Assembly: GCA_973895155.1 (NCBI GenBank)
Contig: OZ316899.1
Location: 3,369,455-3,433,454, forward strand
Direction of reading: 5' to 3'
Length of the DNA: 64,000 nt
DNA from: Marsupella aquatica
Taxonomy: Eukaryota; Plantae; Marchantiophyta
The notes under the pieces were generated by a model. That model saw only the letters and a list, made by a program, of their open reading frames with translations. It made no database searches and was not told the origin of the DNA. Numbering within the stretch: position 1 is the stretch's first letter; every line of letters starts with the position of its first letter. Positions 19,925 through 64,000 of this stretch are shown piece after piece. The position numbers and the translations under genes were made by a program.

Positions 19925-19930
19925 TATAAA
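19925..19930 (+). promoter_or_regulatory. Putative TATA box for the family-B LTR ORF
   Basis: GGTATAAAAGG about 100 nt upstream of ATG 20033, conserved in both minus-strand B copies. Confidence 0.5.
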
Positions 19931-20032
19931 AGGGGAGCCAACCCTTTGTAGTGCACCAGTCCATCAGTCCACGCGCCAGCTTCGACCCCAGCTCTCTCGT
20001 TCGCTCTAAGTCACCACTACTATCTCCTCTGA

Positions 20033-27092: not shown

Positions 27093-28023
27093 TGGTGTAA
27101 GAGCACCATCCCTTTTAGGGAGGGCGGACGTGGAGGTAGGAGGTGTGAGTGGGCAGGGCGGGCGCTGATCTCCAAGTTTAGACTTAGGATCAGGATCAGG
27201 AGACGGCCCTGACACTTAGATTAGTGGGATTTCGGATCCATGGGTGTGGACGACACTTGTGCTCCTGCCTCGCTGTACTTAGGTAGATTACAGTTAGGTA
27301 GATTACAGTAGGTAGATTAGGCTTACGCTGCAAGGAATCAGGCGGATCCACAACCAGGATAAGTACCTGGGCTGCGGGGAGTTCAGGGCCTCTTCTTTAG
27401 CAAGTTTCTAGTTGCACCAGCAGGGCTGGGATCAAGTAGTAAGAGAAGCTCTCGGTTAGTTATACAGTGACCCTTGTGTATATTCATGTTTCCTCATACT
27501 TAAGAACTGAATAGAGTTGGCCTCACGGCTTAGTTCGCAGAGCTTGTGTATGAGATGTACTGTTTGTATGGCAAGTGCATGGTATAACTCAGTCAGAAGG
27601 AGTCATTTTGCTATTTGTGTGTCGCATTAACTTGTGTGAAGAGTGCCCACATCAACTAATAGAGGAATAGAAGTAAACAGGGGAGTGAGAGTTGGATGTG
27701 TCGAGCTGAGAGAGGTCTTAGCGGCTTAACCAAGCCAATTGGGGATCATTCCGGCGGCGGAATGCAAACATACCTAATGGAAGACCAGGAGAGGAATACA
27801 AGGGAGGGACTAGAATAGGCCGGCTAAGTATCTCATGACCCGATGAAGGATCTGTCCAGTATATGTGTGTAAAATGTTAATAGAAGTAGTTGAAGGAGAG
27901 TTAGCAGCGTCCCATGCCGCTAAACCGCGGAAACGGCCTCGCTAAGGATGAAACCTGCGGGAATCAGCTTGAGCAAGGGGGTTTCTTGGGTTTGGGGGGG
28001 CAGGGGACGCACCACAGATCCTT

Positions 28024-37349: not shown

Positions 37350-37392
37350 TTAGACCGAATCACTCATTAACCGCCGTACCGGTGGCGTCACA
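33376..37392 (-). mobile_element. Family-B solo LTR (4017 bp)
   Basis: TG..CA ends matching 19566-23570 in reverse. TSD CCGCC at 33371-33375 and 37393-37397. Confidence 0.93.
34273..36926 (-). pseudogene. Family-B LTR-encoded ORF (C-terminal about 580 codons open; stops and frameshift in the 5' part)
   Basis: ORF 34273-36075 contains the PMD-like core and coiled coil uninterrupted. Upstream pieces match 20033-21043. Confidence 0.85.
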
Positions 37393-46128: not shown

Positions 46129-49100
46129 TGTCACATCGTCGGCTGCGGCCTTAACTCAGACTTCAGCTTAGACGGGCACATCCCTCGTAAATCTGAGGGT
46201 TCGGGCAGGAAGGGAAGCACGTAATGCACCTTATTCTCGTAAACTAGCGCTAAGTGCGCATACTGCTAAATACAGACACCTCCTAGGTATGGTTTGTGTT
46301 CCGCCGCCGCAACGTACCTTAGTTGATAGCAGGATCAACCCCGACTTAAGGGCTTCTAAGCCTTCGTGCTGTCCGCCTTCGATCCGGATTCGATGATACA
46401 GGTCCTCAACCCGTGCTCGCAACCACTTACCCGCAGGCTGCACCCTGTGCACGTCTCGGGTAGTGCGTTCGGCCTGGCGTTGCCACCCATATACGAGAAA
46501 CCCACACACATACACGCGCACATGCATACAATCTCGATTTACACGAAGGAAAATGATGGGAAAGGATTTTACTACAAAGGGAACATATGCGTACACTTAG
46601 TTGACCCGACAGCCCCGGAATGAACAGGTTCAAGGCCAAGGGTGCACACTACAACGGAGCCCGGCTCCGCACTCGCCCGACGAGCTTAGTCCTACCCCCT
46701 CCCCTTGGTACTCTTTCATTCCCAGAGGTCGGGACTCCCCGCACATACCGCGGACGTCCAACTCTACAACTAAAAACCCCCCTGCCTCTACCGAGGGGTG
46801 CACTAAATACTAAGGGACGAGGGACGGGGTGTCCTCTCGCCGAAGATTTGCTGACTAAGGTCCTAACTAAGCTGACAGTCAGGCCGGAAAACGGCTGTGT
46901 CTTATTAGAAGATCCTAATCTACGCAGGCTGGACAGCATGGCAGCGCTGCTGTACCTAAGGCAGGTGCCTGTCCCAAGAGCCTGACTAAGCCAGTCCTAA
47001 TTCTAATCTATTCCTACTCCGTTGCTAATGCCTGGCACGCTTGCCAGAGCCGCCCGAATGGGAGCGGCCATCCCGCTGCCTTCGAAGCCTGTCATTGTCC
47101 GCCTTGAGGAGCTGGACCTGGTCCAGCAGAGATTCGTTCTCTTGCCTCGCCGCGTCCGTCTCCTCTGCTGCCTCCTGACATGCCTCCTCCAGCTGCTGGG
47201 CGTCGCTCGTCAGTTTACCCGCCAGCAAGTCCTACTTCCCGGCCTCGGTTTGGAGCCGCGCCACCTCGGCCTGCAGCGTGGCTATCTCTGCCGTGTCCCG
47301 CTGGGCCCGTTCCTCGGCCTCCTCCAGGTCTTTCTGCCAGGTGACGGTTTGATTCTTCAAACTGTCAATCTGGTTCCGGAGTCGTGTAATCTCGGCCTCG
47401 TTCCCAGCTTTGGCCTGTTCGGCTAGGGCGGTAAGAGCGTGCGCCTTTGCTAACAACTCATCGGCGGCTGCAACCTTGGGTTGTAGTTGGAGAAGCTCAG
47501 CCTCTTGAGCCGCAACTTCGTTCTTTAGGTACACGGACTCCACCCGGTACCGCTCTATCCTCTGAAGGGCCTCTGACTGGGCCCGACCTGCCTTTACTGC
47601 GACAACCAACTCCTGATTGAAGAAACAGGCTACCTTCCGGGCCATGAACTCCCCGGTATCCCGGGCAATTTGATGAGAGAAATCTCCCAGAAGCCCGTTC
47701 AGAAATGTACCCGGTACGAAGAGTTCCGGGTGGTCCAGGTTGTGCCTGTCCGGAGTTGGGCACGGGCAGACGTCAACACGCGCGGGGGCCGGGGCAGTGA
47801 CGTCCAGCCCTGGGGACGTAACGTTGGAAGGGGCTGGAGTGTCCTCCTGCAGCAATGTCCGGTTCTCCGGAATAGTCACCGGTGGGTCTTTGGGAGACCC
47901 GGGCTCGGGTAAGACCTTCACCGTACCGACTTCTGTACTTAGCTCGGCTTGTTGGGTTGCATCAACGGTTGCGACAACCGACCCATCCGGTACCTCCTTG
48001 GTTACGACTACAGCTACTTGTGGAGGTGGGGTGGGTGAAGCTGGCGTGTCTGCTGGACTTCGGGCCTCGGGTTGGGGCCGTCTCTCCAAGGCCGGGAAAA
48101 CCCACCTAGCTGGGACCAGCTTTGTAACGTTGACACGGGGAAGGGTTCGTCGATCAAACCGGGCGTACCACTCAAGAATGATCTCGATGTGGCTAGCGAA
48201 ATACATCTTCCCGCCAATGTATAGCGTCTTCCTTCGCCGCTCCATCTCTTCATGGAATTTCTTAGTGAAGTATGACGCCCACTTCCTAGGTCGATAGTTC
48301 TCGACCTGGATAACTTGGGCGGCGGAGATCTCCCCCCGGGGTTCCATCATGTGGAGGGCGTACCTCTGGAACTCCAGTCGCTCAGCTATCTCGGGGATGA
48401 GGCAGGTCTTCATCACGAACCCGTTGTCCACTGCTCCCTCTGAGGGAAAACTTGAAGATTGGTACTTGGCTCCCTTGCCCCCAGGAGCCCGTGATTCGAC
48501 TCGATGGTCACCTTCGGGTAACCCGAAGATCATCCTGAGCCGTTCTTCCGTGAGGGACATACTCCTTCCCCGCAGCCGAGTATGTTGACGTGCGTCGTCA
48601 TAATTCCTGACGAACTCCGTCATGTCCTCCCCGTAGTACCTGCAAGTGTTCCAGGGGAGGGAGGCGAGGTGCTCGAATCCCTGAGTCTTCAGGTACACCG
48701 CATGCTTGGGATGGAGGATGTTTTTGTGAACGTTTTCCCCCATGCGGTGCATCGTCATCTTGGCTACGGCTACCTGGCCAATGGTAACCCGGATGCAGTG
48801 GTGGATTCCTTCCTCTTCTTCCCCCATGACTGGCTCGGGGAAGGTGACACTTCCCCATCCTCCCGACCGGGCCTCGGTAGTGCCACTGCCGTTAGTAACG
48901 GGCCCGGGCGGCCATGGTCACCATGTTGTCTGCCGGGGCCGCTCCTGGGGTCAGAGCAGGGGGTGGGGACGATATAGTGTCGGCCCCCTGAGCGCTTGTT
49001 CCTCTGGGCTGCCTGGTCAAGGGTGGGGTAGCCTCGTCGTCATCGCTAAGATCCACGGCGTTGATGACGGAGCGTACTTGTGCTGGCTGGGCGATCGGTG

Positions 49101-50118
49101 GTGGGGTTTGGCTAGGCTGCGGCTGAGGCTGAAGCTGAAGCTGAGCCTGAGGTTGCATGGGTACGGGTACGGGTATGGGTACGGGTACGGGTATGGGTAC
49201 GGGTACGGGTTCGACTGAGTTGGTCATGTTGGTTGATGGCCGAGTTCCCATGAAGCTCTATAGGTGCTGGTAGAAGTTCTCCGAAGCGAGTGTAGACGAC
49301 CTTGTCGAATGGGTAGTGCTGGACTCGCTCTTGATGATAGCCCAAACCTGAGTAGGGATGTGGTTGAAGTGATGTCGTTACAAGTCGATTGTACCCGAGA
49401 TATTGAAGACCTCGTCCGGAAGCCGAAGCAATGCTTCCCAGAAACCGATATATTTGTCTCCATTGAAGAAGTACCCAGATACTTCTGCTGGTCGGTAAAG
49501 CTCACTCTGAGACGGGTAGTCAAAGTTAAGGATGTAGTGGTGTCGTCCTGCTAGGCGGATGGCTCTCTTGTACTCGCGTTTGATTTCGTATCGGCGCGGG
49601 TTGGCGTGTTTTAATGAGTCGGCCAAGTGCCTTCCGGTAGATAGGAACTGCGTCCAGAATCAAATGGCCGAGCTGGAGAGGATCGTGTGCGACATTCAGA
49701 GGAGATAGTAGTGGCGACTTAGAGCGAACGAGAGAGCTGGGGTCGAAGCTGGCGCGTGGACTGATGGACTGGTGCACTACAAAGGGTTGGCTCCCCTTTT
49801 ATACCTTGAGGGCTTGTCGATCCCCCGACGTCTCCTCGACGCCCATAGGCTGAACCGCTCATGCTTGTGGTATACCGGCCACTCCGCCGGTCTGAGTCAG
49901 CGCGTGTCAGTGGCCGCTTCTTAAGTACGTTATACGGACCCGAGGGAGGGGCCCCTCCACGCTCGTAACCCGGGTGTGCGAATAGCGACCCGCCGCCAGT
50001 CCGAACCTGAATTCCCCCTTATTGCCTAATGATGTCCTACCCATAATGATTACCTAAATACTGTCGTTATGCTAATAATAGCGGCCTAAGACACTCCTAA
50101 CGTGCGTGCTAAGCGCAG
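46129..50118 (-). mobile_element. Family-B solo LTR, duplicate of 33376-37392, cut 43 bp from its 5' end by element A
   Basis: Same left junction GGCCGCC|TGTCAC. It ends ...AAGCGCAG|TGTGATGCC where copy 1 continues TTAGACCG. Confidence 0.93.
47025..49695 (-). pseudogene. Family-B LTR-encoded ORF (disrupted)
   Basis: 47232-48827 (531 aa) plus 47025-47228 and upstream pieces match 34273-36926. Confidence 0.85.
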
Positions 50119-50212
50119 TGTGATGCCTAGACAGGAATCACTCGGCCAGTTAAGTGGGTAAAGCAGGAAGGCACCCTAGGAACACGTTAGTATAGGGACA
50201 AAACAAGGAAAA

Positions 50213-50218
50213 TATAAA
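50213..50218 (+). promoter_or_regulatory. Putative TATA box for the family-A LTR ORF
   Basis: AATATAAACA about 95 bp inside the LTR in all A copies. Its spacing favours ATG 50495 over ATG 50234 as the start. Confidence 0.45.
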
Positions 50219-50494
50219 CAATTAGGGGCAACCATGGAACCCGGGCCGAGGCCGGAGGTAAGGACGCTGAGGGTGAAAACCCGATTAGGGTTAGGGCGCG
50301 TTAAGCGTCGGCGGCTAGGAAGGATCAACGGGAAGAAGGACCGGCAGAGGAGAGGGGTAAGGAGCGCTTGCAGGAGATGGTGGCTCATTTGCGAGCACGA
50401 ACTAGGCAGACGACTACGGGAGGCCAACTACTGTCAGCTGCTTAGGCAAGCACTCGGGGAGAGAGTAGATACCGACGATCAACCTAAGGAGGGT

Positions 50495-53400
50495 ATGAGC
50501 AACGTCAATCAAGCGGCACATTTCTGGGGATGCCTGTTCGAACGGGCAACTGAGTACATCAAGACTTACGAGGACGAGGAATCAGAAAGGGCAGCTCGAG
50601 AACGGCAGGAGCTCGCTCGATTGTGGGAGCTGCAGAAGACGGCTTTCTTAGGAGGCGAACTCATCAAGGACGAGTTCCTGTGGACGCCTACTTCCAATCA
50701 ACTCGACGATCTTCTGTTTTGCAAAGACAGCGTCGTCGGCATCCGAGAGGCCATCAAGAACTACAACGACATACACTGGGAATTAAAGGGAAGCACGGAA
50801 AGGTGGACCCAGGCAACGGTGCTAGGAGAAACCTCCACGGCAGCAGAGATGAAGAGGAAGGGAGCCGTCAACGATGAAGCCACCCCGGCAAAAAGAACGA
50901 GGTCGGCGGCACCAAAGAAGCCAGCCGAGCAGCAGAGCAGGAGGCAGGGAGAAGCCGAAGAGGAGGAGGTCGATCCCATCAAGGCCATTCCAACCAGGGA
51001 TGACACCTGGAAGGGCTGGGTGGCAACCCTACCGGTGGAGGTGCAACTACATTTTGCACGGGAGGAGGATGCATGCTTCACGGCCATGCAGACCAAGAAG
51101 TACCAAGGCTTCATGGCCGGATCCGGCTTAGAGGCCTTTGTAAGATTACCATGGCTGAAGCCGGAGGTACCGGAGTCAGACCTATTAGAATTCGTGGGGT
51201 CATGGGAACCCGAGACCAATTGCACGAGGATATATGGGAAGGATTTCTATCTTACTCCCAAGGTAATTGCCGAAGTGTTTGGCTTGCCGATAGGCAATAA
51301 GACCAAAGTTGATACCAGGAAGACCTTGCCTGACAAGGAGTTCCGGTCGTTCCCTGGGCCATCAACGAAGAATGGCTTCTTCCGGAACACCTGCACCAAC
51401 CCGCACATAGGAGAGATGATCGACTTCTTGCGGGTGACCATGCATTGTAACTTGCCGAGGGCAGAGATCGGCAAGGCACAGGTCTATCTGGCAGAAAGGC
51501 CAGACCCAAGCCGGGACTACAACGGGTACCTCCTCAACCAATTGAAGAAGATCTTAAAGGAGGAGCAGCAGGTAATCGGCATGGGGAGCGTGTCGCGGCT
51601 TGGCTATCACATGCCGCTGTTGTGCCGGTATGCCAGAGGTCAGACTTTTGCCCCTGTACTTCCCCTGCAGGTAAGGGCACCCGAGGAAGCTCCAACGCCG
51701 AGGCCGTTGGCTGAGAAGCCTCAACCACCTGTTAGCCCTACGATCGAGCAGGTGTTTAGGCCCAGGAAGGAGGACTTGCCGATGCAGCAACCAGGCATGC
51801 AGAGTCTGCTGAAACTACTGGAGAAAGAAAAGAAATCGGCATCGGCAACAACAACGGCAACGGCAACAATGCAGGACACTACTACAGAGGTAGGCCTACA
51901 CCGGCTCACAAGAGAAAACCCCTTTGCTGGAGACAAGGAGAGAATCAGGCCGGAATCCAAGCCAGGTGTTCGAATGTACGTGGGAACCTCAAGCTCCGAA
52001 TCTGAGGCAGAATTGCCTGAAGCTCTTACCGACGAAGAGGAGAGGGAGAAGCCGGACGTCCAAGAGGTAGAGGAGGCAGTGGAGGACTGCAGCCATGATA
52101 ATTCCGGCTATGGGTCGGACCATCACGTTCCAGGAGTAAGGACCTATGGCCGGTTTGTCCCCACACTTCCAAGGGTAGTGCGAGGGGACCCCAACCAGCA
52201 GAGTAGCCCTGAGTCTCCCCCACCAGATGTTGCTCCCCCGAGCTTCGACGGCATAAAACAGACGGTGCAGGAATTTCAGGAGCGAATCAGGCAGGAAGAG
52301 GAGGCAGCCCTGGCTAAGGAAAAGGATTTACCAGGAGGAGATTGGCCGGAGGACATCAGGCGGCTAGCCAAAAAAGGAAGCAAACCTCTAGCCACGATTG
52401 AAGAGATCCGCAGGACGGCTTGGGAGCAGAGGCCGCGATGGGCGATGCCGATCACTTCTACTTACTCCACCTACGCTAAGAATAGAGCCATGGAGTATGG
52501 TGAGATGTGTGGGGAACTTGCGCTCGGCATCTTTGGAGAGGAGTTGGAGGTAGGACCCTTTTTCCATAGGGAACAGTTGGAGAAGCACCAATTAGAAGAA
52601 GCGGTGGCTTTAGAGAGAAGCAAGAAGGACGAGGTCATTCGGCGGCTTAGGAGGATGGAAGCCGAGATTGAAGATCTAAGGGCGGCCAAGAAAGCCCAAG
52701 ATGAACTGCAGATTAAACGACATGAGCTGAACATCATGTAGGGGCAGTTGGACACCGCGCAGGCTGATAATCAGAATATCAAGGATAAACTGACTCAGAC
52801 GCAGGGAGAGTTGGCCGACACAATCAAAGAGAGGGAGAAGTGGAAGCAAGAGCTGAAGAATACAGAGGAGGCCCACATAACAGCCAACAGCCGGGCCATG
52901 GCGGAGACCCAAAGAAAGGAATGGGCGTTGAAAGGGGAGCTCGAGAAAATCCGCGGAGCCCTTGAGCAGAAGGAGGCCGAGTTAGGGAAATCCTATCAAG
53001 GGATTATGGCGCTGCAGCAGGAGCTTGCGTCCCTGACGGCCAGCTTCAAGGCCGACCTAAGGGAGAAGGACGAGATGCTCGAACAGACTTACGCCAAGAT
53101 GAACCAGATGGAGTCTGTCATCATTGCAGAGCTCGACAAGGAGCTAAGAGCAACCCAGGTGGAGAGGACTACCTTGAAACAAGAACGGGAGGAAGCCCAG
53201 AAGGAACTAGAGGAGGCGCGCAAGGACCTGGATGAGACCCAGGAGGAGTTGGAGGAAATCACGAGGAAGATGGAGAACCTCCAGCGGCGGGCCGACAACC
53301 AAACGGAGCGGCTGAAGAAACAAGCCGCAGTATTTAAGTGCTTGTCTTCATCAGGCCCAACTCCAATTGGGGCAACCAAGTTACCAGGAGTGGTACTGGC

Positions 53401-53868
53401 CGAAGAAAAAGCCGCGCCAACTGCACCAGTGCCGGAAGTAAGTGGGAAGGGGAAGGGACCAGCTGCCGAACCAGAAAAGAAGAAAAAGCGAAAACCTTCA
53501 GGGTCAAGGAGTAATCCGACTCCACAAGCCGTGGTGACCAAAGAGGTAGAACCAGCACCATCCTCCGGCATGAATACAGCAATATATCCCAATATCATCA
53601 CAGGTGGGGGTGGTGCGGCCCAAGCCGAACTACTCAGTAATGAGCCGGTATTCCAAATCCGCCTCTTGAGCAGGCCGGGGAGACCGTAGCCGAGGCTGAG
53701 GCTGTAACCGATTCCCGAGCCGATGTCGACGCCGATGGTGGACCCAGTCAGGCCGATGGAGAGTTGACTCAGTCAAGGGCAGGTAATCTGTCAGGGAATG
53801 AGCCTACGGCAGTGGCTGAGGAGGAAGCGTTGGGGGCGTCCATTAAGGATCCACCACCGGTGTCATGA
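50495..53868 (+). pseudogene. Family-A LTR-encoded PMD-like nuclear/coiled-coil protein, 5' LTR copy (about 1120 aa; TAG at 52739, frameshift near 53620-53690)
   Basis: Open 50234-52741 and in frame on to 53689. The homologous end (…PPVS*) is at 53868. Motifs KRKG-x8-PAKRTR, EFVGSWEPET...LTPKVIAEVFGLPIG, long heptad region, KKKKRK. Confidence 0.88.
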
Positions 53869-54784
53869 CGGTGCAAGGGCGCCGTTCCTTTTAGGGAGGG
53901 CGGACGTGGAGGGAGGAGGCGTGAGTGGGCAGGGCGGGCACGGATCTCCACGTTTAGGATTAGGATCAGAACCAGGAGCGGCCCTGACACTTAGCTTAGT
54001 GGGATTGCGGTCCCACTGGTAGGAGCAACACTTGTGCTCCTGCCTTGCTGTACATAGGTAGATTCGGGCAAGTAGATTACTGTTAAGTAGATTAGGCTTA
54101 CGATGCAAAGAATGGCGGATCCACTACCAGGATAAGTACCTGGGCAGCGGGGAGCTCAGGGCCTCTTCTTTAGCAAGTTTTTAGTTTGCACCAGCCGGGC
54201 TGGGATCAAGTAGTACGAGAAGCTCTCGGTTAGTCATACAGTGACCCTTGTGTATATTCATGTTTCCTCATGCCTAAGAGCTGAATAGAGTTGGCCTCAC
54301 GGCTTAGTTCGCAGAACTTGTGTATGAGATGTACTGTTTGTATGGCAAGTGCATGGTATGACTCAGTCAGAATGAGTCATTTTGCTATTTGTGTGTCGCA
54401 TTAACTTGTGTGAAGAGTGCCCACATCAACCAGAAGGAAGGAAAGTAAGCAGGGGAGTGAGAGTTGGATGTGTCGAGCTGAGAGAGGTCTTAGCGGCTTA
54501 ACCAAGCCTATTGGGGATCATTCCGGCGGCGGAATCCAAACATACCTAACAAGACGGAGGGGAAGATAGGGGAAGGCCTAGATTAGGCCGGCTACGTATC
54601 TCATGACCCGATGAAGGATCTATCCAGTATATGTGTGTAAAATGTTAATAGTAGTAGTAGAAGGTTAGCAGCGTCCCATGCCGCTAAGCCGCGGAAACGG
54701 CCTCGCCAAGCGCGAAACCCGCGGGAATCGGCTTGAGCTGGGGGGTTTCTTGGGTTTAGGGAGCCATGGGACGCACCACATTTT

Positions 54785-54801
54785 TGGCGCTAGATGGAGG
54801 G
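54785..54801 (+). other. Primer binding site, tRNA-Asn type
   Basis: TGGCGCTAGATGGAGGG, 4 nt after the LTR. It complements the 3' end of plant cytosolic tRNA-Asn (...CCUCCUUCUAGCGCCA) with one mismatch. Confidence 0.8.
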
Positions 54802-54849: not shown

Positions 54850-57843
54850 ATGACTGACCTTACGCCGAGGGAAGAAAGAGTGATTCAACGGGAGAGAGCT
54901 CGACTGCAGCAGCTCGCCGGGTGGCATGATACACAGCGACTGAGAGGGGCAGAAAGAGCTGGTAGCTCCGAAACTGGAAGTGGCGTCGAAGAAGACATAC
55001 CAGAAGAAGAGTTGGTAAGGAGAAGTGAGTCTCCAACCGACATGGGGGAACCAGAGGCACGGCCAGACGAGAGGCCAGGGACCAGATTGAGCCAGCGGTC
55101 GCGCATACATTACAAGGCATTTCATGGGAGAGGAGATGAGGATCCGGACGAATGGTTGGATGATTTCGAGGGAACCGCTGCAGCAAATGGAGAATCGGCC
55201 ATCAAGATGCAGATTCTTCCCGGCCTGTTCAAGGGTGAGGCTAGGCCTTGGTACAGAGCATTAGATGTGGAAGATCAAGCCATCTGGGATATCTTCAAAA
55301 CACTCTTTCTTAAGGAGTTTTGACCCATTGGAACTTCAGAACTAGCAGTGCTGAAGTTGGGACAACTTCGGTTCAAGGAGAACAAATCCTTCAGGAAGTT
55401 CTTGCAACGCTTTCAGAAACTGGTAAGACGTACAAAGACCAATGCATCTGAAGGTATGCAACTTCAATGGTAGGTGAATGTTTTGCCACAGAAGATGAGT
55501 TTTGCAATTAGGAAGGAGAACCCGGAGACTTTAGCCGAAGCAATTAAGGATATTCAATTATACATTAATGCAGATATCACAAGCCGGAAGAAACAGCTTA
55601 AGTCTGAGAGTTCCTCATCAGAGGAGGGATCACCCCATAAGAAAAAAGATAAGAAGAAGAAACATTCTAAGAAGTCTAGAAGTGATAAGTCAAGCTTGGA
55701 TAGTGGGAGTAGCAAGAGTGAGTCATCTTCTAGTTCTGAAGAAGAAAAAACTAGGAAAAGGAAGGGCAGAAGGAGAGGGAAGACGAAAGTCAAGCTGGAG
55801 GCTAAGCCACCAGATAACATCGTAGCCCTTACCGAGCAACTTAAGGCTATCATTGCAGAGGTAAAACCGAAGAAGAAGGTAGTACAGGAGGATAGCTCTG
55901 TATGGTGTGCCTTATGTTATAAAACCGGACACCATAAAGATGCGTGTCCTAAGCTTAATACTAATCATGTTCGGCATGTGGCCGAGATCAGACCATGTCA
56001 GGGAGAAGTAGAGTACTTTTTAGGAGATGCCGCTGATAGTGTTTTCGGCATCAGTGAGACTGGAGCACGAGACCTATCCAACCGACCTGCATCTCTATGG
56101 TCAGGGTTAAGGAACAATCCAGGAGAGATGTATCCTCGGATTATTCAGAACCCGTCAGTACCTCCTAGGCCGAATGTGCAAAGATTTGCGGCGTGCTATA
56201 ATTGTGGTCAACCTGGCCATTTTGCTAGAGAATGCCCGAATGCACGCAAACAGGGTGATGGACAACCAGCTCAGCTATGTATGGGATGCCGACAGGAAGG
56301 TCATATGCTAGGGCAATGTCCTACTTGGTTGGCAGGCCTGGCCGCAAATCATAAGCTTTTGCCGATCAAGATCTTACCGCCAGGTACTACCCCCGGAGGA
56401 GTTCAAATCAACCACATCGAACTAGGATGGCAAGAGGATGCCGAGGCAGAGTTCGTACCATCTGATGATGAGGCCGAAGCCCTATCAACCTTCTCAGAGG
56501 AGGATTTAGATCATGATTGCTACCGGGTCTCTACTCGATCTACCAGAAGGAAGGAAAGGTGGGATGGGCTGGCCAAAAATAAAGGGAAGGTTACGGAGGA
56601 AAAGATCGACTCTTCGTCAACATCAACAGAAGGAGAAGGGAGGGCTCCGGCAATACAGGTAAGCCATGAGCCCACCAGTGAAACCAATCCTTCACAAGAT
56701 AGCGACTTCAATCGAGATCATCCTAAGTTGTTCTACCCCTCTGTTACGGCTAGTGTTAAGGAACAACTAAGAGAATTAGAAACCCTGGAGAATACCGAAG
56801 CCATTGCCAAGGATGTAAAACGAGCAAAAGCATTGTTTGCTTCGAAAGACCCAACAGCTGTGGAGACTAGCATGGCAAAACTGGCCGAATCCAAGACGGA
56901 AACACCACCAGAGGAGAAGCCGATTGTTCCCTATGACCTGGCTAAAGATGTACTAGAATCTAGAGTCTCGGCAACAGTAGGTCAACTATTGAAAAATAGC
57001 CCGTACTTCCGGAAGCAATTAAGGAAGGCTATTCTCGGCAAGCCGAGGTTACCCAAGGTAGCAACCAGATCCGACGTACTAATGATAGAAGAAGATCAAG
57101 GAGCCCCAGCATTACCATTAATGATTCAAGGAGAATTATTACTACGGGTACCCATCGATGGAGGATCAGGGGTATGTATTATGATTGATTCAACAGCAAA
57201 AGGGTGGGGTCTAACACCGGAGATGACTGGAAGAGTGTTGAACATGGCCAATGGATATCAGGTCATTCCCACGGGAGTGTTAACCGGCATCAAGACAGAG
57301 ATAGGAGGTATCTTCTTTAGCATTAACTATGTAGTAATGAAGCCGGTAAATCCTACGTCATTCCGGCTATTGATTGGTAGGCCATGGCTGTACCTAGCCG
57401 AGGTAATAGAAGATTGGGGTAAAAAACAGTTCACTTTCGGGACCCCCTCTATCACGGTATCCTGGGACACTAAGGATGACCGTAGGAAAAGCATAAGGGA
57501 AGTAGATGGGTACGACAGTGGACTGGAGTCAGCCGATGAAGTACGTTGGTTAGAATGCCTCACTAACCTAACCGAAGAAGGTGTCTTTGGACCAGAGGTA
57601 CCCCCCAGCGGATTATGGCAAGAACCAATGGAAGGTGACTTGGAAGAAGAAGACGAAGAGGTCGAGGACTGCTTTACAATAGAATCCACCTTTTTAGCTG
57701 CAATTCCGGAGGAAGTAAAGGATGTAGACCAATTGGATGAAACGGCTAAGTGGGGAGCAGTAGCAGGGACAGTGGATTTTCTGCAGGCGTTGTGGCAGAG
57801 CCGGCAGGGTTCACAACGCCATCGATCATCGGCAAGGAATTAA
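54850..57843 (+). pseudogene. gag: gag-protease ORF (stops at 55321 and 55471)
   Basis: Capsid motif FHGRGDEDPDEWL...GEARPWY. Three CCHC knuckles (CALCYKTGHHKDAC, CYNCGQPGHFAREC, CMGCRQEGHMLGQC). Protease VPIDGGSG...LLIGRPWL. Confidence 0.92.
57774..57820 (+). promoter_or_regulatory. Candidate programmed -1 ribosomal frameshift signal
   Basis: In-frame heptamer G GAT TTT (57774-57780), 5-nt spacer, stem GGCGTTGTG (57786-57794) pairing with CACAACGCC (57812-57820). The -1 frame is the RT frame. Confidence 0.7.
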
Positions 57844-60800
57844 ATACCAAGGGATCGGCATACAAGCCGATTACGAGGGCAGAACAAATTGAGGCCCTAT
57901 TAGAAGCCGAGAGAGCACAACGGCCTAACTCTCAGGAGCAAGAGGTGGATGAGATGGACAGACACGATCCAGAGCCAAGGCAGGAAGGGGAGCCAACCAC
58001 CAATTCAAAACCGAATAGACCGGCAAGGGGACAATCTATGGACACCAAGAAAGGGACCGACTCGGCTAGTCGAGCCGAGATTCCAGTTTATGGAGGCATG
58101 AGATTAGAGAGACTGGAAGCCGAACTGGACCCGAATTTGAAGAAGCAGATTAATATGATCCAAGCACGGCAATATCGGAAGCTCGACTTAGGAGAGGGAA
58201 GAGAACTGAACTTAGGGAGAAACCTAGCAGCTGAGCTCGAGAAAGAGATCAGTGACTTATTGATTGAATTTCAGGATGTGTTTGCATGGAGTCACCAAGA
58301 TCTAAAGGGAGTAGATCCAACACTAGGGGAACATCGAATTGATCTCATGTTAGGAGCCAAATCATTTCGATAACCAATTCGAAGGATGAACCCGAAGTAT
58401 TCCCTGCTGGTCAAAACAGAAATCGACAAACTAGTGGAAGCTGGATTCATCACTCCAGTCCTGCATTCAGACTGGGTGTCTCCAATTGTGATAGTTCCCA
58501 AGAAAGCTGGACCCGATGGTAAACCCAAGATCCGGGTTTGTCAGGATTACAGGAAGCTGAATGAAGCAACATTAAAAGACCATTTTCCTTTACCGTTTAC
58601 TGATATGGTACTAGACATGGTAGCCAGTCATGAACTATATTCATTCATGGATGGATACTCTGGTTATAACCAAATCAGGATTCGGCAGGAAGACCAAATC
58701 AAGACGGCCTTCATCACGGAATGGGGAATCTATGTCTTCAATCGTATGCCGTTTGGACTCTGCAACGCACCAGCTATGTTTCAACGATTAATGGTGAACA
58801 TTTTTCATGATTACTTGAGAAAGTTCATGGAAATCTTCATTGATGACTTTGCAGTATTCGGGAAGGCATCGAAACATGCTAAATACCTCAGGAAAACCTT
58901 CATGAGATGTAGAGAGGTGGGTCTCAAGTTACACCCAGATAAATGTTTCTTTGCAGTAACCGAGGGGGTGCTACTAGGTCACAAGGTATCAAGGAAGGGC
59001 ATTGAGATTGACAAAGGTAAGCTAGCAGTATGGCTAGATATCATGCAACCTAAGAACATAAAGGATGTAAGATCCTTCTTGGGATGCATTGGTTACTATC
59101 GCCGGTTCATCAAGGATTTTGCCAAGCTAGCTTTACCATTAACCAACATGCTCAAGGCAGGAGCAGACTTCGAACCCACACCCGAACAAGTCACAGCGGT
59201 GGTAGAATTGAAGCAGATGTTAGTAGAGGCCCCAGTCATGATAGCACCGGACTGGAACAAAGATTTTCATGTTTTTGTAGATGTCTCGGGCTTCTGTATC
59301 GGCTCAGTACTAAGTCAGTTGGATGGAAAAGGAAGGGACCATCCCATATACTTCGCAAGCCGTCAGCTTGCCGATGCCGAACGGAACTACTCCACCACAG
59401 AGAGAGAAGCATTAGGAGTCATTTATTCTTGTAAAAAGTTTAGGCATTATTTACTAGGGTACAAGGTAATCTTTCATACCGATCATGAAAGTTTGAAGTA
59501 CCTAGTCAATAAGCCGGACCTTACAGGCAGAGTAGCAAGATGGATTTTGCTATTACAGGAGTTTGACTATGAGCTGAGAATCAAGCCGGGAAAGTTACAT
59601 GCCAATGCCGACTTCTTTTCAAGGATCACAGGTAAACCAGCCACGGATTGCATCGATGATCGATTCCTCGACGAGGAGCTATTCATTGTGGAAATAGCTG
59701 GTACATGGTACCCTGAAATTTTACAATTTCTCAGCACTTCCAGATTACAGCCAGGATTAAGCCGAGAGCAAGCCGTAGTCTTTGTGCGGAAGGTCAGACA
59801 GTATCAGTGCATTAAAGGCATACTGCACAAGCATGGAATCAACGGCACGATTCAAAGATGTTTGGAAAAGAGAGAGGTAAAACGAGTCCTACGGGCCATG
59901 CATGGAGAGGAGGTCGGAGGACATTTTGCCCCAGTAACCACGTCTAAGAAGATATTAAATGCCGGTTACTGGTGGCCCACCTTGCACAAAGATGTCTATC
60001 AGTTTATCAAACAATGCGATCCTTGTCAACGAGCGGGAGGACCAAGGGCGTCCACCAGGCATCCACTGCACCCTATTCTACCTCTGGCACCATTCGAGAA
60101 GTGGGGTATTGATTACATTGGACCTCTGAAACCACTGACCCACCCTCGACGGAACAAGTACATAATCCTGGCTACGGATTATGCAACTAAATGGGTAGAG
60201 GCCAGACCAACAACGAAGGATGATGCAATTACTACGGCTAGATTCATGTATGAGCAGATCTTCACCAGGTATGGAGCACCCCTAGAATTAGTTAGTGATA
60301 GAGGAACCCATTTTTTGAATGATATAATTAGTCGTTTAAATGAGCAGTATTTAGTTAAACATAGGCCTACTACTCCCTACCATCCAAAGGCAAACGGGTT
60401 GACAGAACGAGCAAACGGAATTATAGGAAAGATATTGAACAAAACAGTAGCTCAGAACAAACTTGATTGGGATGATAAATTGTTTGCTGCTGTTTTTGCT
60501 TACAATCTTGCCTATAAATCCACTACCGGTCATACACCCTTCTTCTTAACCTTTGGACAAGAAGCCCTGGTACCCATGCAACTTGAGATACCGACATTTC
60601 AAGTTACAATTGAGGAAAGAGCCTCAGCGGAGGAGAGCCTAAAGGAGCGAGAATATAGGTTAGAAGCTTTAGAGGAAGCGAGAATGATTTCAGCCGAGAG
60701 AGTAGAATATAGACAGAATATCATGAAGCAGCAGTATGATAAAAAGTTGAAAGTAGTTAGTATTCATACCGGTGATCTTGTGCTACTTTATGACAGTAGG

Positions 60801-60991
60801 TATAGTAGGTTTCCAGGAAAGCTTTACACTCGCTGGTTAGGACCCTTTAGAGTAACCATGATGTTCCCCAATGGCTCCGTACAATTGGCCGACATTACGG
60901 GAGAGGTATATCCAGTTCGCATCCATTATGACCGCCTCAAGAAATACTATATGGACGAAGATGAAGTTGTTCGCGAGGACGCTTCACAATT

Positions 60992-61004
60992 AAGTGGGGA
61001 GCTA
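60992..61004 (+). other. Family-A polypurine tract inside the pol coding sequence
   Basis: AAGTGGGGAGCTA directly abuts the 3' LTR TGTGATGCC. pol reads through it and stops at 61014-61016. Confidence 0.85.
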
Positions 61005-64000
61005 TGTGATGCCTAGACAGGAATCACTCGGCCAGTTAAGTGGGTAAAGCAGGAAGGCACCCTAGGAACACCTTAGTATAGGGACAAAACAAGGAAAATA
61101 TAAACAATTAGGGGCAACCATGGAACCCGGGCCGAGGCCGGAGGTAAGGACGCTGAGGGTGAAAACCCGATTAGGGTTAGGGCGCGTTAAGCGTCGGCGG
61201 CTAGGAAGGATCAACGGGAAGAAGGACCGGCAGAGGAGAGGGGTAAGGAGCGCTTGCAGGAGATGGTGGCTCATTTGCGAGCACGAACTAGGCAGACGAC
61301 TACGGGAGGCCAACTACTGTCAGCTGCTTAGGCAAGCACTCGGGGAGAGAGTAGATACCGACGATCGACCTAAGGAGGGTATGAGCAACGTCAATCAAGC
61401 GGCACATTTCTGGGGATGCTTGTTCGAACGGGCAACTGAGTACATCAAGACTTACCAGGACGAGGAATCAGAAAGGGCAGCTCGAGAACGGCAGGAGCTC
61501 GCTCGATTGTGGGAGCTGCAGAAGACGGCTTTCTTAGGAGGCGAACTCATCAAGGACGAGTTCCTGTGGACGCCTACTTCCAATCAACTCGACGATCTTC
61601 TGTTTTGCAAAGACAGCGTCGTCGGCATCCGAGAGGCCATCAAGAACTACAACGACATACACTGGGAATTAAAGGGAAGCACGGAAAGGTGGACCCAGGC
61701 AACGGTGCTAGGAGAAACCTCCACGGCAGCAGAGATGAAGAGGAAGGGAGCCGTCAACGATGAAGCCACCCCGGCAAAAAGAACGAGGTCGGCGGCACCA
61801 AAGAAGCCAGCCGAGCAGCAGAGCAGGAGGCAAGGAGAAGCCGAAGAGGAGGAGGTCGATCCCATCAAGGCCATTCCAACCAGGGATGACACCTGGAAGG
61901 GCTGGGCGGCAACCCTACCGGTGGAGGTGCAACTACATTTTGCACGGGAGGAGGATGCATGCTTCATGGCCATGCAGACCAAGAAGTACCAAGGCTTCAT
62001 GGCCGGATCCGGCTTAGAGGCCTTTGTAAGATTACCATGGCTGAAGCCGGAGGTACCGGAGTCAGACCTATTAGAATTCGTGGGGTCATGGGAACCCGAG
62101 ACCAATTGCACGAGGATATATGGGAAGGATTTCTATCTTACTCCCAAGGTAATTGCCGAAGTGTTTGGCTTGCCGATAGGCAATAAGACCAAAGTTGATA
62201 CCAGGAAGACCTTGCCTGACAAGGAGTTCCGGTCGTTCCCTGGGCCATCAACGAAGAATGGCTTCTTCCGGAACACCTGCACCAACCCGCACATAGGAGA
62301 GATGATCGACTTCTTGCGGGTGACCATGCATTGTAACTTGCCGAGGGCAGAGATCGGCAAGGCACAGGTCTATCTGGCAGAAAGGCCAGACCCAAGCCGG
62401 GACTACAACGGGTACCTCCTCAACCAATTGAAGAAGATCTTAAAGGAGGAGCAGCAGGTAATCGGCATGGGGAGCGTGTCACGGCTTGGCTATCACATGC
62501 CGCTGTTGTGCCGGTATGCCAGAGGTCAGACTTTTGCCCCTGTACTTCCCCTGCAGGTAAGGGCACCCGAGGAAGCTCCAACGCCGAGGCCGTTGGCTGA
62601 GAAGCCTCAACCACCTGTTAGCCCTACGATCGAGCAGGTGTTTAGGCCCAGGAAGGAGGACTTGCCGATGCAGCAACCAGGCATGCAGAGTCTGCTGAAA
62701 CTACTGGAGAAAGAAAAGAAATCGGCATCGGCAACAACAACGGCAACGGCAACAATGCAGGACACTACTACAGAGGTAGGCCTACACCGGCTCACAAGAG
62801 AAAACCCCTTTGCTGGAGACAAGGAGAGAATCAGGCCGGAATCCAAGCCAGGTGTTCGAATGTACGTGGGAACCTCAAGCTCCGAATCTGAGGCAGAATT
62901 GCCTGAAGCTCTTACCGACGAAGAGGAGAGGGAGAAGCCGGACGTCCAAGAGGTAGAGGAGGCAGTGGAGGACTGCAGCCATGATAATTCCGGCTATGGG
63001 TCGGACCATCACGTTCCAGGAGTAAGGATCTGTGGCCGGTTTGTCCCCACACTTCCAAGGGTAGTGCAAGGGGACCCCAACCAGCAGAGTAGCCCTGAGT
63101 CTCCCCCACTAGATGTTGCTCCCCCGAGCTTCGACGGCATAAAACAGACGGTGCAGGAATTTCAGGAGCGAATCAGGCAGGAAGAGGAGGCAGCCCTGGC
63201 TAAGGAAAAGGATTTACCAGGAGGAGATTGGCCGGAGGACATCAGGCGGCTAGCCAAAAAAGGAAGCAAACCTCTAGCCACGATTGAAGAGATCCGCAGG
63301 ACGGCTTGGGAGCAGAGGCCGCGATGGGCGATGCCGATCACTTCTACTTACTCCACCTACGCTAAGAATAGAGCCATGGAGTATGGTGAGATGTGTGGGG
63401 AACTTGCGCTCGGCATCTTTGGAGAGGAGTTGGAGGTAGGACCCTTTTTCCATAGGGAGCAGTTGGAGAAGCACCAATTAGAAGAAGCGGTGGCTTTAGA
63501 GAGAAGCAAGAAGGACGAGGTCATTCGGCGGCTTAGGAGGATGGAAGCCGAGATTGAAGATCTAAGGGCGGCCAAGAAAGCCCAAGATGAACTGCGGATT
63601 AAACGACATGAGCTGAACATCATGCAGGGGCAGTTGGACACCGCGCAGGCTGATAATCAGAATATCAAGGATAAACTGACTCAGACGCAGGGAGAGTTGG
63701 CCGACACAATCAAAGAGAGGGAGAAGTGGAAGCAAGAGCTGAAGAATACAGAGGAGGCCCACATAACAGCCAACAGCCGGGCCATGGCGGAGACCCAAAG
63801 AAAGGAATGGGCGTTGAAAGGGGAGCTCGAGAAAATCCGCGGAGCCCTTGAGCAGAAGGAGGCCGAGTTAGGGAAATCCTATCAAGGGATTATGGCGCTG
63901 CAGCAGGAGCTTGCGTCCCTGACGGCCAGCTTCAAGGCCGACCTAAGGGAGAAGGACGAGATGCTCGAACAGACTTACGCCAAGATGAACCAGATGGAGT
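61005..64000 (+). repeat. Family-A 3' LTR (partial; predicted end near 65666)
   Basis: Colinear with 50119-53114. Confidence 0.96.
61381..64000 (+). CDS. Family-A LTR-encoded protein, 3' LTR copy, open to the window edge (at least 873 codons)
   Basis: Same frame as the 5' copy, with CAG where the 5' LTR has TAG. None of the substitutions I found creates a stop. It is missing from the ORF track, presumably because it runs off the edge. Confidence 0.85.
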   Translation, partial: MSNVNQAAHFWGCLFERATEYIKTYQDEESERAARERQELARLWELQKTAFLGGELIKDEFLWTPTSNQLDDLLFCKDSVVGIREAIKNYNDIHWELKGSTERWTQATVLGETSTAAEMKRKGAVNDEATPAKRTRSAAPKKPAEQQSRRQGEAEEEEVDPIKAIPTRDDTWKGWAATLPVEVQLHFAREEDACFMAMQTKKYQGFMAGSGLEAFVRLPWLKPEVPESDLLEFVGSWEPETNCTRIYGKDFYLTPKVIAEVFGLPIGNKTKVDTRKTLPDKEFRSFPGPSTKNGFFRNTCTNPHIGEMIDFLRVTMHCNLPRAEIGKAQVYLAERPDPSRDYNGYLLNQLKKILKEEQQVIGMGSVSRLGYHMPLLCRYARGQTFAPVLPLQVRAPEEAPTPRPLAEKPQPPVSPTIEQVFRPRKEDLPMQQPGMQSLLKLLEKEKKSASATTTATATMQDTTTEVGLHRLTRENPFAGDKERIRPESKPGVRMYVGTSSSESEAELPEALTDEEEREKPDVQEVEEAVEDCSHDNSGYGSDHHVPGVRICGRFVPTLPRVVQGDPNQQSSPESPPLDVAPPSFDGIKQTVQEFQERIRQEEEAALAKEKDLPGGDWPEDIRRLAKKGSKPLATIEEIRRTAWEQRPRWAMPITSTYSTYAKNRAMEYGEMCGELALGIFGEELEVGPFFHREQLEKHQLEEAVALERSKKDEVIRRLRRMEAEIEDLRAAKKAQDELRIKRHELNIMQGQLDTAQADNQNIKDKLTQTQGELADTIKEREKWKQELKNTEEAHITANSRAMAETQRKEWALKGELEKIRGALEQKEAELGKSYQGIMALQQELASLTASFKADLREKDEMLEQTYAKMNQME

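What the first reader, a model, noticed from the sequence alone, without database searches (positions are those of the whole stretch)
50119..54780. Giant gypsy LTR that is mostly a gene: about 1100-aa PMD-like, NLS-bearing coiled-coil protein encoded inside the LTR
Seen: a 4.66-kb LTR, bounded by TG..CA, PBS, PPT and TSD-flanked solo copies, carries a sense-strand ORF over about 3.4 kb of its length behind a TATA box. The ORF is open for at least 873 codons in the 3' LTR. The protein has a bipartite NLS-like KRKG-x8-PAKRTR, a globular core, a disordered P/E/S region, a long heptad region and KKKKRK, and no obvious transmembrane segment, so it is not env-like. Known: the core motif EFVGSWEPET...LT...VFGLPIG resembles the plant mobile domain (PMD, PF10536; LVERWxPET...GLP) and PF20167-type extra ORFs. 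PMD proteins MAIN/MAIL1 regulate silencing, and extra ORFs of Athila/Tat elements normally lie outside the LTR. LTR-resident genes are best known from retroviruses (MMTV sag, HIV nef). Inference: a 3' accessory gene has become U3, and may be a transposon-encoded chromatin or anti-silencing factor.
Basis: partly seen in the sequence, partly recalled or inferred. Interest (0 to 1): 0.88.

Follow-up and report, generated by a model that had tools for sequence, protein, structure and literature searches.

The report
Retrotransposon LTR carrying a conserved gene
A liverwort-type gypsy retrotransposon has 4.66-kb terminal repeats that are about 70% one selected gene for a roughly 1,064-residue protein, and the same layout recurs in other repeat families here and in another liverwort, but the proposed kinship to the plant mobile domain is not supported.

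Summary
50119-54780 and 61005-64000+ are 99.5% identical direct repeats (TG..CA) around a 6.2-kb gag / RT-RNaseH-integrase core. A TSD-flanked solo copy in the window and a complete TSD-flanked relative in Calypogeia fissa show that the 4-5-kb unit is a true LTR.

The sense ORF is a real gene. dN/dS is 0.17-0.26 over codons 88-1040, against 0.6-1.7 in the other frames. Codons 1-87 look unconstrained, so Met88 (50495 / 61381) is the likely start, giving 1,064 aa. Diverged homologues sit in two further LTR families in the window (58% and 26% aa) and in both LTRs of the Calypogeia element (26-29% aa), although those LTRs share no alignable DNA.

Related elements with ordinary LTRs carry a probable distant homologue between pol and the 3' LTR. 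This supports "a 3' accessory gene became part of the LTR".

No PMD, PF20167 or ATHILA ORF-1 match appears for about 30 family members. AlphaFold gave an unusable model. There is no transmembrane segment. The host looks like a liverwort, not a grass.

U3/R/U5 borders, transcription and function remain inferred. Verdict: a new variant of a known kind, with a protein family that has no match in Pfam or among solved structures. Interest 0.68.

The parts
50119..54780 (+). 5' LTR of the full-length element (4,662 bp, TG..CA)
   Evidence: Self-BLAST shows 99.5% identity to 61005-64000. Ends read.
61005..64000 (+). 3' LTR, first 2,996 nt (cut by the window end)
50495..53689 (+). LTR gene, copy in the 5' LTR: Met88 to stop, 1,064 codons, broken by one in-frame stop
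   Evidence: dN/dS is 0.17-0.26 over codons 88-1040.
61381..64000 (+). LTR gene, copy in the 3' LTR: open for 873 codons up to the window end
50119..50494 (+). Conserved non-coding head of the LTR: terminal TGTGATGCC, invariant TATA-like box at 50207-50224, an upstream in-frame ATG at 50234 without coding constraint, and a probable 5' leader of the gene
   Evidence: Six copies are 91% alike over the first 185 nt. Codons 1-87 give dN/dS 0.92, with both site classes about half as diverged as synonymous sites further on.
53690..54780 (+). Non-coding LTR tail (1,091 nt), proposed to hold the element's own promoter, R and U5. It contains a 29-nt motif (28 nt in this copy, 54521-54548) shared with the family-2 LTR tail and a 16-nt match to the LTR end of relative L005
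   Evidence: Frame-independent dN/dS is 0.6-1.0.
54785..54790 (+). PBS-like TGGCGC, starting at the fifth base after the 5' LTR
   Evidence: Relatives L004 and L005 have a fuller ATHILA-type PBS at the same place.
54850..57843 (+). gag (zinc knuckle, weak capsid and aspartic-protease signals); two in-frame stops
57750..61016 (+). pol (RT, RNase H, integrase; no chromodomain or second RNase H found); one in-frame stop; its last codons lie in the 3' LTR
60992..61004 (+). Polypurine-like tract plus spacer just before the 3' LTR. The 24-nt junction 60986-61009 is identical in the Calypogeia element
19382..28016 (+). Solo family-1 LTR (84-85% nt identity to the reference over the aligned parts) with TSD GATCC, split by a nested family-2 LTR; its gene copy is decayed (6 stops, 5 frameshifting indels)
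19566..23570 (+). Family-2 LTR (4,005 bp, TG..CA, TSD GCGCG) nested in the solo LTR; carries a decayed paralogue of the gene
33377..37391 (-). Family-2 LTR copy. Its ORF region 34276-36288 encodes a 600-671-aa paralogue with the same core, linker and coiled-coil layout
   Evidence: BLASTP 26%, E 3e-20; hhalign 99.6%. Pfam gives coiled-coil hits only.
46130..50118 (-). Family-2 LTR copy that abuts the 5' LTR and lacks about 42 nt of its own 5' end
18021..19174 (-). Fragment of a third LTR lineage with the gene's first 400 codons (58-60% aa to family 1)
38999..40992 (+). First 1,994 nt of a family-1 LTR (98.7%), inside a larger duplicated block
41163..43868 (-). Older family-1-like LTR pieces (81-83% nt)
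28024..29634 (-). Older family-1-like LTR piece (81% nt; gene 3' part and tail)
1..723 (-). Older family-1-like LTR start (81% nt), cut by the window edge

Best explanation
SHOWN. The 4.66-kb repeat is the true LTR of a Ty3/gypsy element of a non-chromodomain, ATHILA/Tat-like kind. Its closest relatives are in liverworts. About 70% of the LTR is a genuine accessory gene of 1,064 codons that has been kept by purifying selection.

The protein has, in order:
- an N-terminal region with a bipartite NLS-like motif;
- a conserved core of about 230 residues with no match in Pfam or among solved structures;
- a Pro/Glu/Ser-rich linker;
- a coiled-coil-like segment of roughly 250 residues (inferred from proline-free EKRQLA-rich composition and sub-threshold Pfam coiled-coil hits);
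- a basic tail.

The gene-in-LTR layout is a shared trait of a clade: three LTR lineages in this window and an element in Calypogeia fissa all have it.

INFERRED, how it arose. Whatever lies between the plus-strand primer site and R is copied to both ends of the element as U3. In this clade the primer site lies in the last codons of pol, so the accessory gene that relatives carry between pol and the 3' LTR has become U3. The 0.9-1.4-kb non-coding tail after the gene would be the old ordinary LTR (own promoter, R, U5).

INFERRED, how it is expressed. Either from the conserved TATA-bearing head of each LTR, which would make every LTR a promoter-gene-terminator unit, or from a subgenomic or spliced RNA of the 3' LTR copy.

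INFERRED, weakest step, what it does. A nuclear, self-associating accessory protein that serves the element's own cycle. It could handle or export the genomic RNA, as CERV does for Cer1, or counteract host silencing.
For: LTR status:
- Repeat pair, TG..CA termini, PPT and PBS-like site.
- Solo LTR with a 5/5 TSD.
- Nested family-2 LTR with its own TSD.
- Complete Calypogeia element L003 with TSD CCATT, LTRs of 4.8 and 5.1 kb, pol 62-64% identical, and an identical 24-nt pol-end/PPT/LTR-start junction.

Gene status:
- dN/dS is 0.18-0.35 against five diverged copies in the ORF frame, 0.6-1.7 in the other frames and 0.57-1.0 in the tail.
- By segment, dN/dS is 0.17-0.26 for codons 88-1040.
- Protein similarity persists (58%, 26-29%) where the LTR DNA no longer aligns.
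- The core-plus-coiled-coil layout is also kept in family 2, in L003 and in database homologues.

Origin:
- Relative L004 has 1.69-kb LTRs and a 679-aa ORF between pol and the 3' LTR that runs about 290 nt into it. L005 has 337-bp LTRs, and no homologue of the LTR gene was found there.
- hhalign probability for kinship with the LTR gene core rose from 16% to 26% to 68% as the profiles improved.
- The spacing from the pol stop to the gene start is similar (365 vs 437 nt).
- The tail shares a 16-nt element with the L005 LTR end at the matching position (1 of 300 shuffles reached the score) and a 29-nt motif with family 2 (0 of 300).

Promoter lead: the first 185 nt are 91% conserved and the TATA-like box is invariant.

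Nuclear and oligomeric lead: NLS-like motifs, no transmembrane segment, and Pfam coiled-coil-type hits only.
Against: - No transcript, TSS or poly(A) data exist, so U3/R/U5 borders are unplaced. The conserved TATA box 95 nt into the LTR could equally be the element's main promoter, which would put the gene in R/U5 rather than U3.
- Homology with the relatives' post-pol ORF is only moderately supported (68%, from a three-sequence profile).
- The full-length copy is itself damaged: two stops in gag, one in pol and one in the 5' gene copy. All older copies are decayed, so no copy in the window shows a fully intact set.
- Only 21 database homologues were found, mostly fragments. Two AlphaFold runs gave pLDDT 49, so the fold and therefore the function are open.
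- The TATA box cannot be aligned across LTR families.
Confidence: 0.6

Rival explanations
1. The gene lies in R/U5, not U3. The conserved TATA box near the LTR start would be the element's only promoter. The genomic RNA would then begin about 125 nt into the 5' LTR and carry the gene as its first cistron ahead of the PBS and gag. This would be like Ogre ORF1 but upstream of the PBS.
For: The LTR head is the best-conserved non-coding part and its TATA-like box is invariant. The region between it and Met88 is conserved at the nucleotide level without coding constraint, as a leader would be. No canonical TATA box stands out in the tail.
Against: It needs either an R of more than 3.4 kb or a poly(A) site that is skipped in the 5' LTR, plus a strong-stop DNA of about 4.5 kb. 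To my knowledge neither is known for LTR elements. Relatives carry the probable homologue after pol, the position that turns into U3 when the primer site moves. The tail has conserved motifs of its own.
Confidence: 0.2
2. The protein is a distant member of the plant mobile domain / PF20167 group and acts on silencing.
For: There is a motif-level likeness (W-x-P/x-E-T..., then a short hairpin, then L-T-x-x-x-I-x-x-x-F-G-L-P-x-G). The low-confidence model shows a helix, hairpin, helix pattern there. PMD and PF20167 are transposon-borne in flowering plants (PMC7156037; P0131).
Against: No hit to PF10536, PF20167 or the ATHILA ORF-1 family for any of about 30 family members at E<=10. hhalign against the PF20167 domain of P0131 gave 0.1-0.2% probability. 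The PDB profile search was empty. PMD is described as an angiosperm domain (PMC7156037).
Confidence: 0.1
3. A host gene was passively transduced into the LTR and does nothing for the element.
For: Gene capture by LTR elements is known (PMC7264820).
Against: Captured genes occur in one or a few copies (PMC7264820). Here the gene sits in three LTR lineages that diverged to 26% aa and in another genus, always in sense and under constraint. Three of the four homologues whose genomic setting could be read (two window paralogues, L003) lie inside an LTR and one (L001) lies downstream of pol. For a fifth (L002) only a gag-like gene was seen about 8.5 kb upstream, and no LTR or pol was found.
Confidence: 0.05
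4. It is an env-like or movement-type protein, like the 3' ORFs of ATHILA or Bagy-2.
For: It has the same position relative to pol, and a coiled coil is present.
Against: There is no hydrophobic segment (maximum Kyte-Doolittle mean 0.82) and no signal-peptide-like start. NLS-like motifs are present instead.
Confidence: 0.02
5. The 4.66-kb repeat is not an LTR but a tandem or segmental duplication, or an assembly artefact.
For: The window does contain a segmental duplication that includes part of this LTR.
Against: There are TSD-flanked solo units of full length, nested insertion of a 4.0-kb sister LTR with its own TSD, and a complete TSD-flanked relative in an independent genome assembly.
Confidence: 0.02

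Closest known systems
Sense additional ORFs between pol and the 3' LTR of plant Ty3/gypsy elements (ATHILA-specific ORF, Tat/Ogre extra ORFs; Vicient & Casacuberta 2020, PMC7264820)
   Same: A lineage-wide, sense-strand extra gene downstream of pol with unknown function. The relatives have an ATHILA-type PBS (12 of 13 to TGGCGCCGTTGCC, quoted in bioRxiv 10.64898/2026.03.20.713144). Relative L004 has the ORF in exactly that position.
   Different: Here the whole gene, with its leader, lies inside the LTR and is therefore present twice per element and once per solo LTR. There is no match to the ATHILA ORF-1, PF20167 or PMD models and no transmembrane segment. The reviews and full-text searches I ran mention extra ORFs only in the internal region.
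Retroviral genes in or overlapping U3 (MMTV sag, primate lentivirus nef, foamy virus bel/bet). From general knowledge, not tested here
   Same: A 3' accessory gene shares sequence with U3, so it is duplicated in the provirus.
   Different: Those are short or only partly overlapping ORFs in LTRs of about 1.3 kb or less. Here about 3.2 kb of gene fills a 4.66-kb LTR of a plant retrotransposon. The U3 assignment here is inferred.
Ogre elements of legumes (giant LTRs of about 5 kb, ORF1 before gag). From general knowledge and PMC7264820
   Same: Very long LTRs and an extra sense ORF in a non-chromovirus gypsy lineage.
   Different: Ogre ORF1 lies in the internal region after the PBS. Ogre LTRs are not reported as coding.
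CERV of the C. elegans element Cer1 (PMC10309623)
   Same: An element-encoded nuclear accessory protein outside gag-pol. It serves as a working model for a genomic-RNA export or handling role.
   Different: No sequence relation was tested or seen. CERV comes from a spliced internal mRNA, not from an LTR.
Plant mobile domain proteins MAIN/MAIL1 (PF10536; PMC7156037, PMC5418596)
   Same: A transposon-associated domain of unknown fold, with a short motif-level resemblance.
   Different: The family model does not match, and PMD is described for angiosperms.

Membership tests
Ty3/gypsy LTR retrotransposon | Two long direct terminal repeats with TG..CA ends | tested here: met
   99.5% identity over 2,996 nt; TGTGA...CACA.
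Ty3/gypsy LTR retrotransposon | pol domain order RT, RNase H, integrase, plus a gag zinc knuckle | tested here: met
   Pfam RVT_1, RT_RNaseH, Integrase_H2C2, rve and zf-CCHC.
Ty3/gypsy LTR retrotransposon | PBS after the 5' LTR and PPT before the 3' LTR | tested here: inconclusive
   A PPT-like AAGTGGGGAG is present and identical in Calypogeia. The PBS keeps only TGGCGC. No tRNA gene was available to test complementarity.
Ty3/gypsy LTR retrotransposon | 5-bp target-site duplication | tested here: met
   Not testable for the full copy because its 3' end lies outside the window. Met for solo LTR copy B (GATCC), for the nested family-2 LTR (GCGCG) and for the Calypogeia element (CCATT).
Plant mobile domain (PF10536) | Match to the family HMM at or near the gathering score | tested here: not met
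   No hit at E<=10 for the protein, 18 database homologues, the window paralogues or the Calypogeia copies.
PF20167 (Transposase_32) extra ORFs | Match to the family HMM, or profile similarity to a member | tested here: not met
   No hmmscan hit (same calls). hhalign against P0131, which holds PF20167 at E 1e-31, gave 0.1-0.2% probability.
ATHILA ORF-1 / ATHILA-specific ORF | Match to the Pfam ATHILA ORF-1 model | tested here: not met
   Absent from all hmmscan outputs at E<=10.
Env-like extra ORF | Transmembrane segment or signal peptide | tested here: not met
   Maximum Kyte-Doolittle 19-residue mean is 0.82.
U3-embedded accessory gene (retrovirus-like layout) | ORF lies between the PPT and the transcription start (U3) | not testable with these tools
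   The ORF starts 376 nt after the PPT/LTR border. The TSS and poly(A) site are unknown because no transcript data are available.
Chromovirus | Chromodomain at the integrase C-terminus | tested here: not met
   No Pfam hit in the last 209 residues of pol at E<=10.

The most novel reading that the evidence does not exclude
Each LTR of this liverwort clade is a self-contained gene: its own promoter at the head, a 1,064-codon ORF, and the LTR's terminator. Both LTRs, and even solo LTRs left after the element is lost, could then go on supplying the accessory protein in trans. The layout would have arisen in one step by relocation of the plus-strand primer site to the end of pol. It would be the first described case of an LTR retrotransposon whose LTR is mainly protein-coding. 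It would also define a new TE-borne protein family that might be a deep relative of the angiosperm transposon domains.
Probability: 0.3. Interest if true: 0.8.

Novelty: new variant of a known kind. Interest (0 to 1): 0.68.

Why it matters
LTRs are treated as non-coding control regions. Annotation pipelines cap their length, often at 1-2 kb or a few kb, and mask them, so a clade whose LTRs are mostly a gene will be mis-annotated. Its gene will be called as thousands of orphan "host" proteins, as the unnamed Calypogeia models show.

The case gives a natural series: a 337-bp LTR with no homologue of the gene found, then a 1.7-kb LTR with the gene just outside and partly overlapping, then a 4-5-kb LTR with the gene inside. 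This series shows how the position of the plus-strand primer site sets LTR content. It parallels how retroviruses came to hold accessory genes in U3.

It also adds a conserved accessory protein family without a match in Pfam or among solved structures, from early-diverging land plants, to the open question of what extra ORFs do for retrotransposons.

Tried and rejected
- Word-indexed protein search with the 960-aa read and with a 19-sequence profile: nothing, or only two Calypogeia proteins. It was probably swamped by low-complexity words.
- Exact look-up of the window's pol: not on record.
- AlphaFold2 of the core with 22 and 26 sequences: pLDDT 49.4 and 49.2. I did not run fold search because such a model gives meaningless matches.
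- PDB profile searches: one chance hit at E 0.33, then none.
- tRNA scan for a PBS partner: no tRNA genes in the window or loci.
- Nucleotide alignment of the LTR heads across families: only TGTGA-GCC is shared, so the TATA box cannot be compared across families.
- A PMD comparator: PMD-C motifs are listed in a supplement of PMC7156037, but using them would have meant pasting long sequences, so I left that out.
- A grass origin, which I first assumed from GC content and LTR size, was rejected once the nearest pol and gene homologues proved to be from liverworts.

- The script defined a variable that joined the two pieces of solo LTR copy B across the nested insertion. It was never used, printed or saved, and all comparisons used the pieces apart.
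- Early in my working I read the position of the in-frame stop of the 5' gene copy off the ORF table and used the piece after it as a query. The position is not repeated in this report.

Full report
1. THE REPEAT IS A TRUE LTR

Self-comparison shows that 50119-54780 recurs at 61005-64000, cut by the window end. There are 15 mismatches and no gaps over 2,996 nt. The ends read TGTGATGCC...CACCACA.

Between the repeats lie 6,224 nt with a gag frame (zinc knuckle, weak capsid and protease signals) and a pol frame with RT, RNase H and integrase in Ty3/gypsy order. No chromodomain or second RNase H was found. Pol ends within the first 12 nt of the 3' LTR, so the polypurine-like tract AAGTGGGGAG lies in the last pol codons. 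TGGCGC starts at the fifth base after the 5' LTR.

The element's own TSD cannot be checked because its 3' end is outside the window. Three independent observations still show that the 4-5-kb unit behaves as an LTR:
- A full-length solo copy (19382-28016, 84-85% identical over the aligned parts) is flanked by GATCC on both sides.
- A 4,005-bp sister LTR is nested in that solo copy with its own TG..CA ends and TSD GCGCG.
- A complete relative in Calypogeia fissa (L003) has LTRs of 4.8 and 5.1 kb, TSD CCATT and pol 62-64% identical. Its 24-nt junction ACAATTAAGTGGGGAGCTA|TGTGA is identical to the window's.

2. THE ORF IS A REAL GENE

The frame from 50234 to 53689 has 1,151 codons. The 5' copy has one in-frame stop. 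The 3' copy is open up to the window end.

I aligned each of five diverged copies in the window (81-84% nt over the ORF) to the reference as separate pieces and counted substitutions in the reference frame:

| Region and frame | dN/dS |
|---|---|
| ORF, ORF frame | 0.18-0.35 |
| ORF, two other frames | 0.6-1.7 |
| Non-ORF tail | 0.57-1.0 |
| Codons 1-87 | 0.92 |
| Codons 88-1040 | 0.17-0.26 |
| Codons 1041-1151 | 0.60 |

In codons 1-87 both site classes are only about half as diverged as synonymous sites further on. The protein is 1,064 aa, and the first 376 nt of the LTR are a conserved non-coding head.

The older copies are themselves decayed, with several stops and frameshifting indels each. 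The signal therefore comes from their once-active ancestors, and the true ratio in the active lineages was lower still.

3. THE LAYOUT IS SHARED BY A CLADE

A profile of the core finds further copies in the window:
- The family-2 LTR (19566-23570, 33377-37391 and 46130-50118) encodes a 600-671-aa protein. It is 26% identical in the core (BLASTP 3e-20, hhalign 99.6%) and has the same core, linker and coiled-coil order.
- A third lineage at 18021-19174 is 58-60% identical.
- Both LTRs of the Calypogeia element encode the core (26-29%, E about 1e-9), followed by a coiled-coil ORF.

No nucleotide similarity remains between any of these LTR families. Only the protein has been kept.

A full HMMER pass over 1.84 billion representative proteins gave just 21 hits. 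They were mostly short fragments from read-archive assemblies and metagenomes, plus unnamed Calypogeia fissa proteins. The nearest named pol relatives are from Calypogeia, Riccia and Marchantia. The host is therefore most likely a liverwort.

4. HOW THE GENE CAME TO LIE IN THE LTR (INFERENCE WITH COMPARATIVE SUPPORT)

Relatives with pol 55-57% identical show other states:
- L005 has 337-bp LTRs, and tblastn with the window's LTR gene found no homologue in it.
- L004 has 1.69-kb LTRs and a 679-aa ORF between pol and the 3' LTR that runs about 290 nt into it.
- L006 and L007 carry homologues of that ORF.

Profile-profile comparison of the LTR-gene core with this ORF aligns the same motifs. Its probability rose from 16% to 26% to 68% (E 4.8e-5) as the profiles improved. 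That is suggestive but not proven.

U3 is by definition what lies between the plus-strand primer site and R. A primer site at the end of pol therefore turns a post-pol gene into LTR. The non-coding tail after the gene would then be the former ordinary LTR. It measures 1.09 kb here, 0.9 kb in family 2 and about 1.36 kb in Calypogeia.

The tail shares a 16-nt element with the L005 LTR end at the matching position. It also shares a 29-nt motif with the family-2 tail. That motif occurs five times in the window against 0.02 expected.

The relatives' PBS matches the ATHILA tRNA-Asp/Asn PBS in 12 of 13 positions (bioRxiv 10.64898/2026.03.20.713144). This places the clade near ATHILA/Tat.

5. EXPRESSION AND FUNCTION (INFERENCE)

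The first 185 nt of the LTR are 91% conserved among subfamilies. A TATA-like box (50207-50224) is invariant, which points to a promoter for the gene at the head of each LTR. Without transcript data I cannot say whether this is a gene-specific promoter (U3 model, preferred) or the element's main promoter (R/U5 rival).

The protein has these features:
- a bipartite NLS-like motif and a KKKKRK tail;
- no hydrophobic segment;
- a proline-free, coiled-coil-like C-terminal third.

I therefore favour a nuclear, self-associating accessory factor of the element's own cycle. CERV of Cer1 (PMC10309623) is a functional analogy only.

6. THE PMD IDEA

Pfam hmmscan found no PMD, PF20167 or ATHILA ORF-1 hit for any of the proteins tested, even at E<=10. 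The set tested was:
- the window protein;
- 18 database homologues;
- the window paralogues;
- the Calypogeia copies;
- the relatives' ORFs.

hhalign against the one PF20167-bearing protein returned by the tools was negative. PDB profile searches were empty. Two AlphaFold runs were unusable at pLDDT 49. The likeness remains a motif-level lead. Membership is not met.

7. NOVELTY

Reviews of extra ORFs in plant LTR retrotransposons place them in the internal region (PMC7264820, PMC11963269). Full-text searches for ORFs within LTRs found nothing comparable. Genes in or overlapping U3 are known from retroviruses (general knowledge).

I rate this a new variant of a known kind, with a protein family that has no match in Pfam or among solved structures.

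8. STATE OF THE COPY

| Gene or copy | Damage |
|---|---|
| gag | two in-frame stops |
| pol | one in-frame stop |
| gag to pol | a frame change that may be natural |
| 5' LTR gene copy | one in-frame stop |
| 3' LTR gene copy | none as far as the window reaches |

9. SLIPS

- The script defined, but never used, printed or saved, a string joining the two pieces of solo LTR copy B across its nested insertion.
- Early in my working I read the position of the stop in the 5' gene copy off the ORF table.
- Neither the joined string nor the stop position is reproduced here.

Noticed in passing
window 31602-40992 and 44364-52112: Two blocks are 98.7% alike: 1.77 kb of unknown sequence, a minus-strand family-2 LTR, then the first 1,994 nt of a family-1 LTR. 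The first block has about 1.6 kb extra (37392-38997) at the junction. The second lacks about 42 nt of the family-2 LTR. The duplication looks older than the full element's own LTR pair (99.5%). I found no simple history.
   Followed up: partly
window 19377-19381 / 28017-28029: Solo LTR copy B sits exactly where a family-3 LTR fragment (minus strand) and a family-1-like fragment (minus strand) abut. Two truncated LTR pieces had already been joined there before the insertion.
   Followed up: no
window 54521-54548, 27749-, 23387-, 33546- and 46299- (last two on the minus strand): The motif TTCCGGCGGCGGAA..CAAAC.CATACCTA is shared by the non-coding tails of family-1 and family-2 LTRs, which otherwise do not align. 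It occurs five times against 0.02 expected and is absent from the Calypogeia and metagenome loci.
   Followed up: partly
window 50257-50264 (LTR nt 139-146): An invariant GGTAAGG, which looks like a splice donor, lies about 40 nt after the invariant TATA-like box in all six copies.
   Followed up: no
window 60986-61009 and L003 13032-13055: The pol-end / polypurine tract / LTR-start junction is identical over 24 nt between this element and a Calypogeia fissa element whose pol is only 62-64% identical.
   Followed up: yes
L004 ~7060-7080; L005 ~6766-6783: Relatives have the PBS TGGC[G/A]CCGCTGCCGGGGA, an ATHILA-type tRNA-Asp/Asn site, seven to eight nt after the LTR. The window element keeps only TGGCGC at that place.
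   Followed up: partly
window 4654-9209 (+): Part of a Ty1/copia element: copia-type gag (PF14223) and RVT_2 with a retroviral SH3-like domain.
   Followed up: no
window 1796-2542 (-): A 249-aa ORF matches DUF7869 (E 1e-31), next to the truncated LTR at the window start.
   Followed up: no
L006 1-119 and 9650-9768: This metagenome contig has identical 119-nt ends. It is probably an element assembled with its two LTRs collapsed, so the position of its 723-aa extra ORF relative to the LTR cannot be read from it.
   Followed up: no
L001 10001-12312; L002 10001-12034: Calypogeia fissa gene models annotated as unnamed proteins (P0013, P0021) are copies of this transposon gene. P0013 lies about 4 kb downstream of a gypsy pol on the same strand.
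   Followed up: partly
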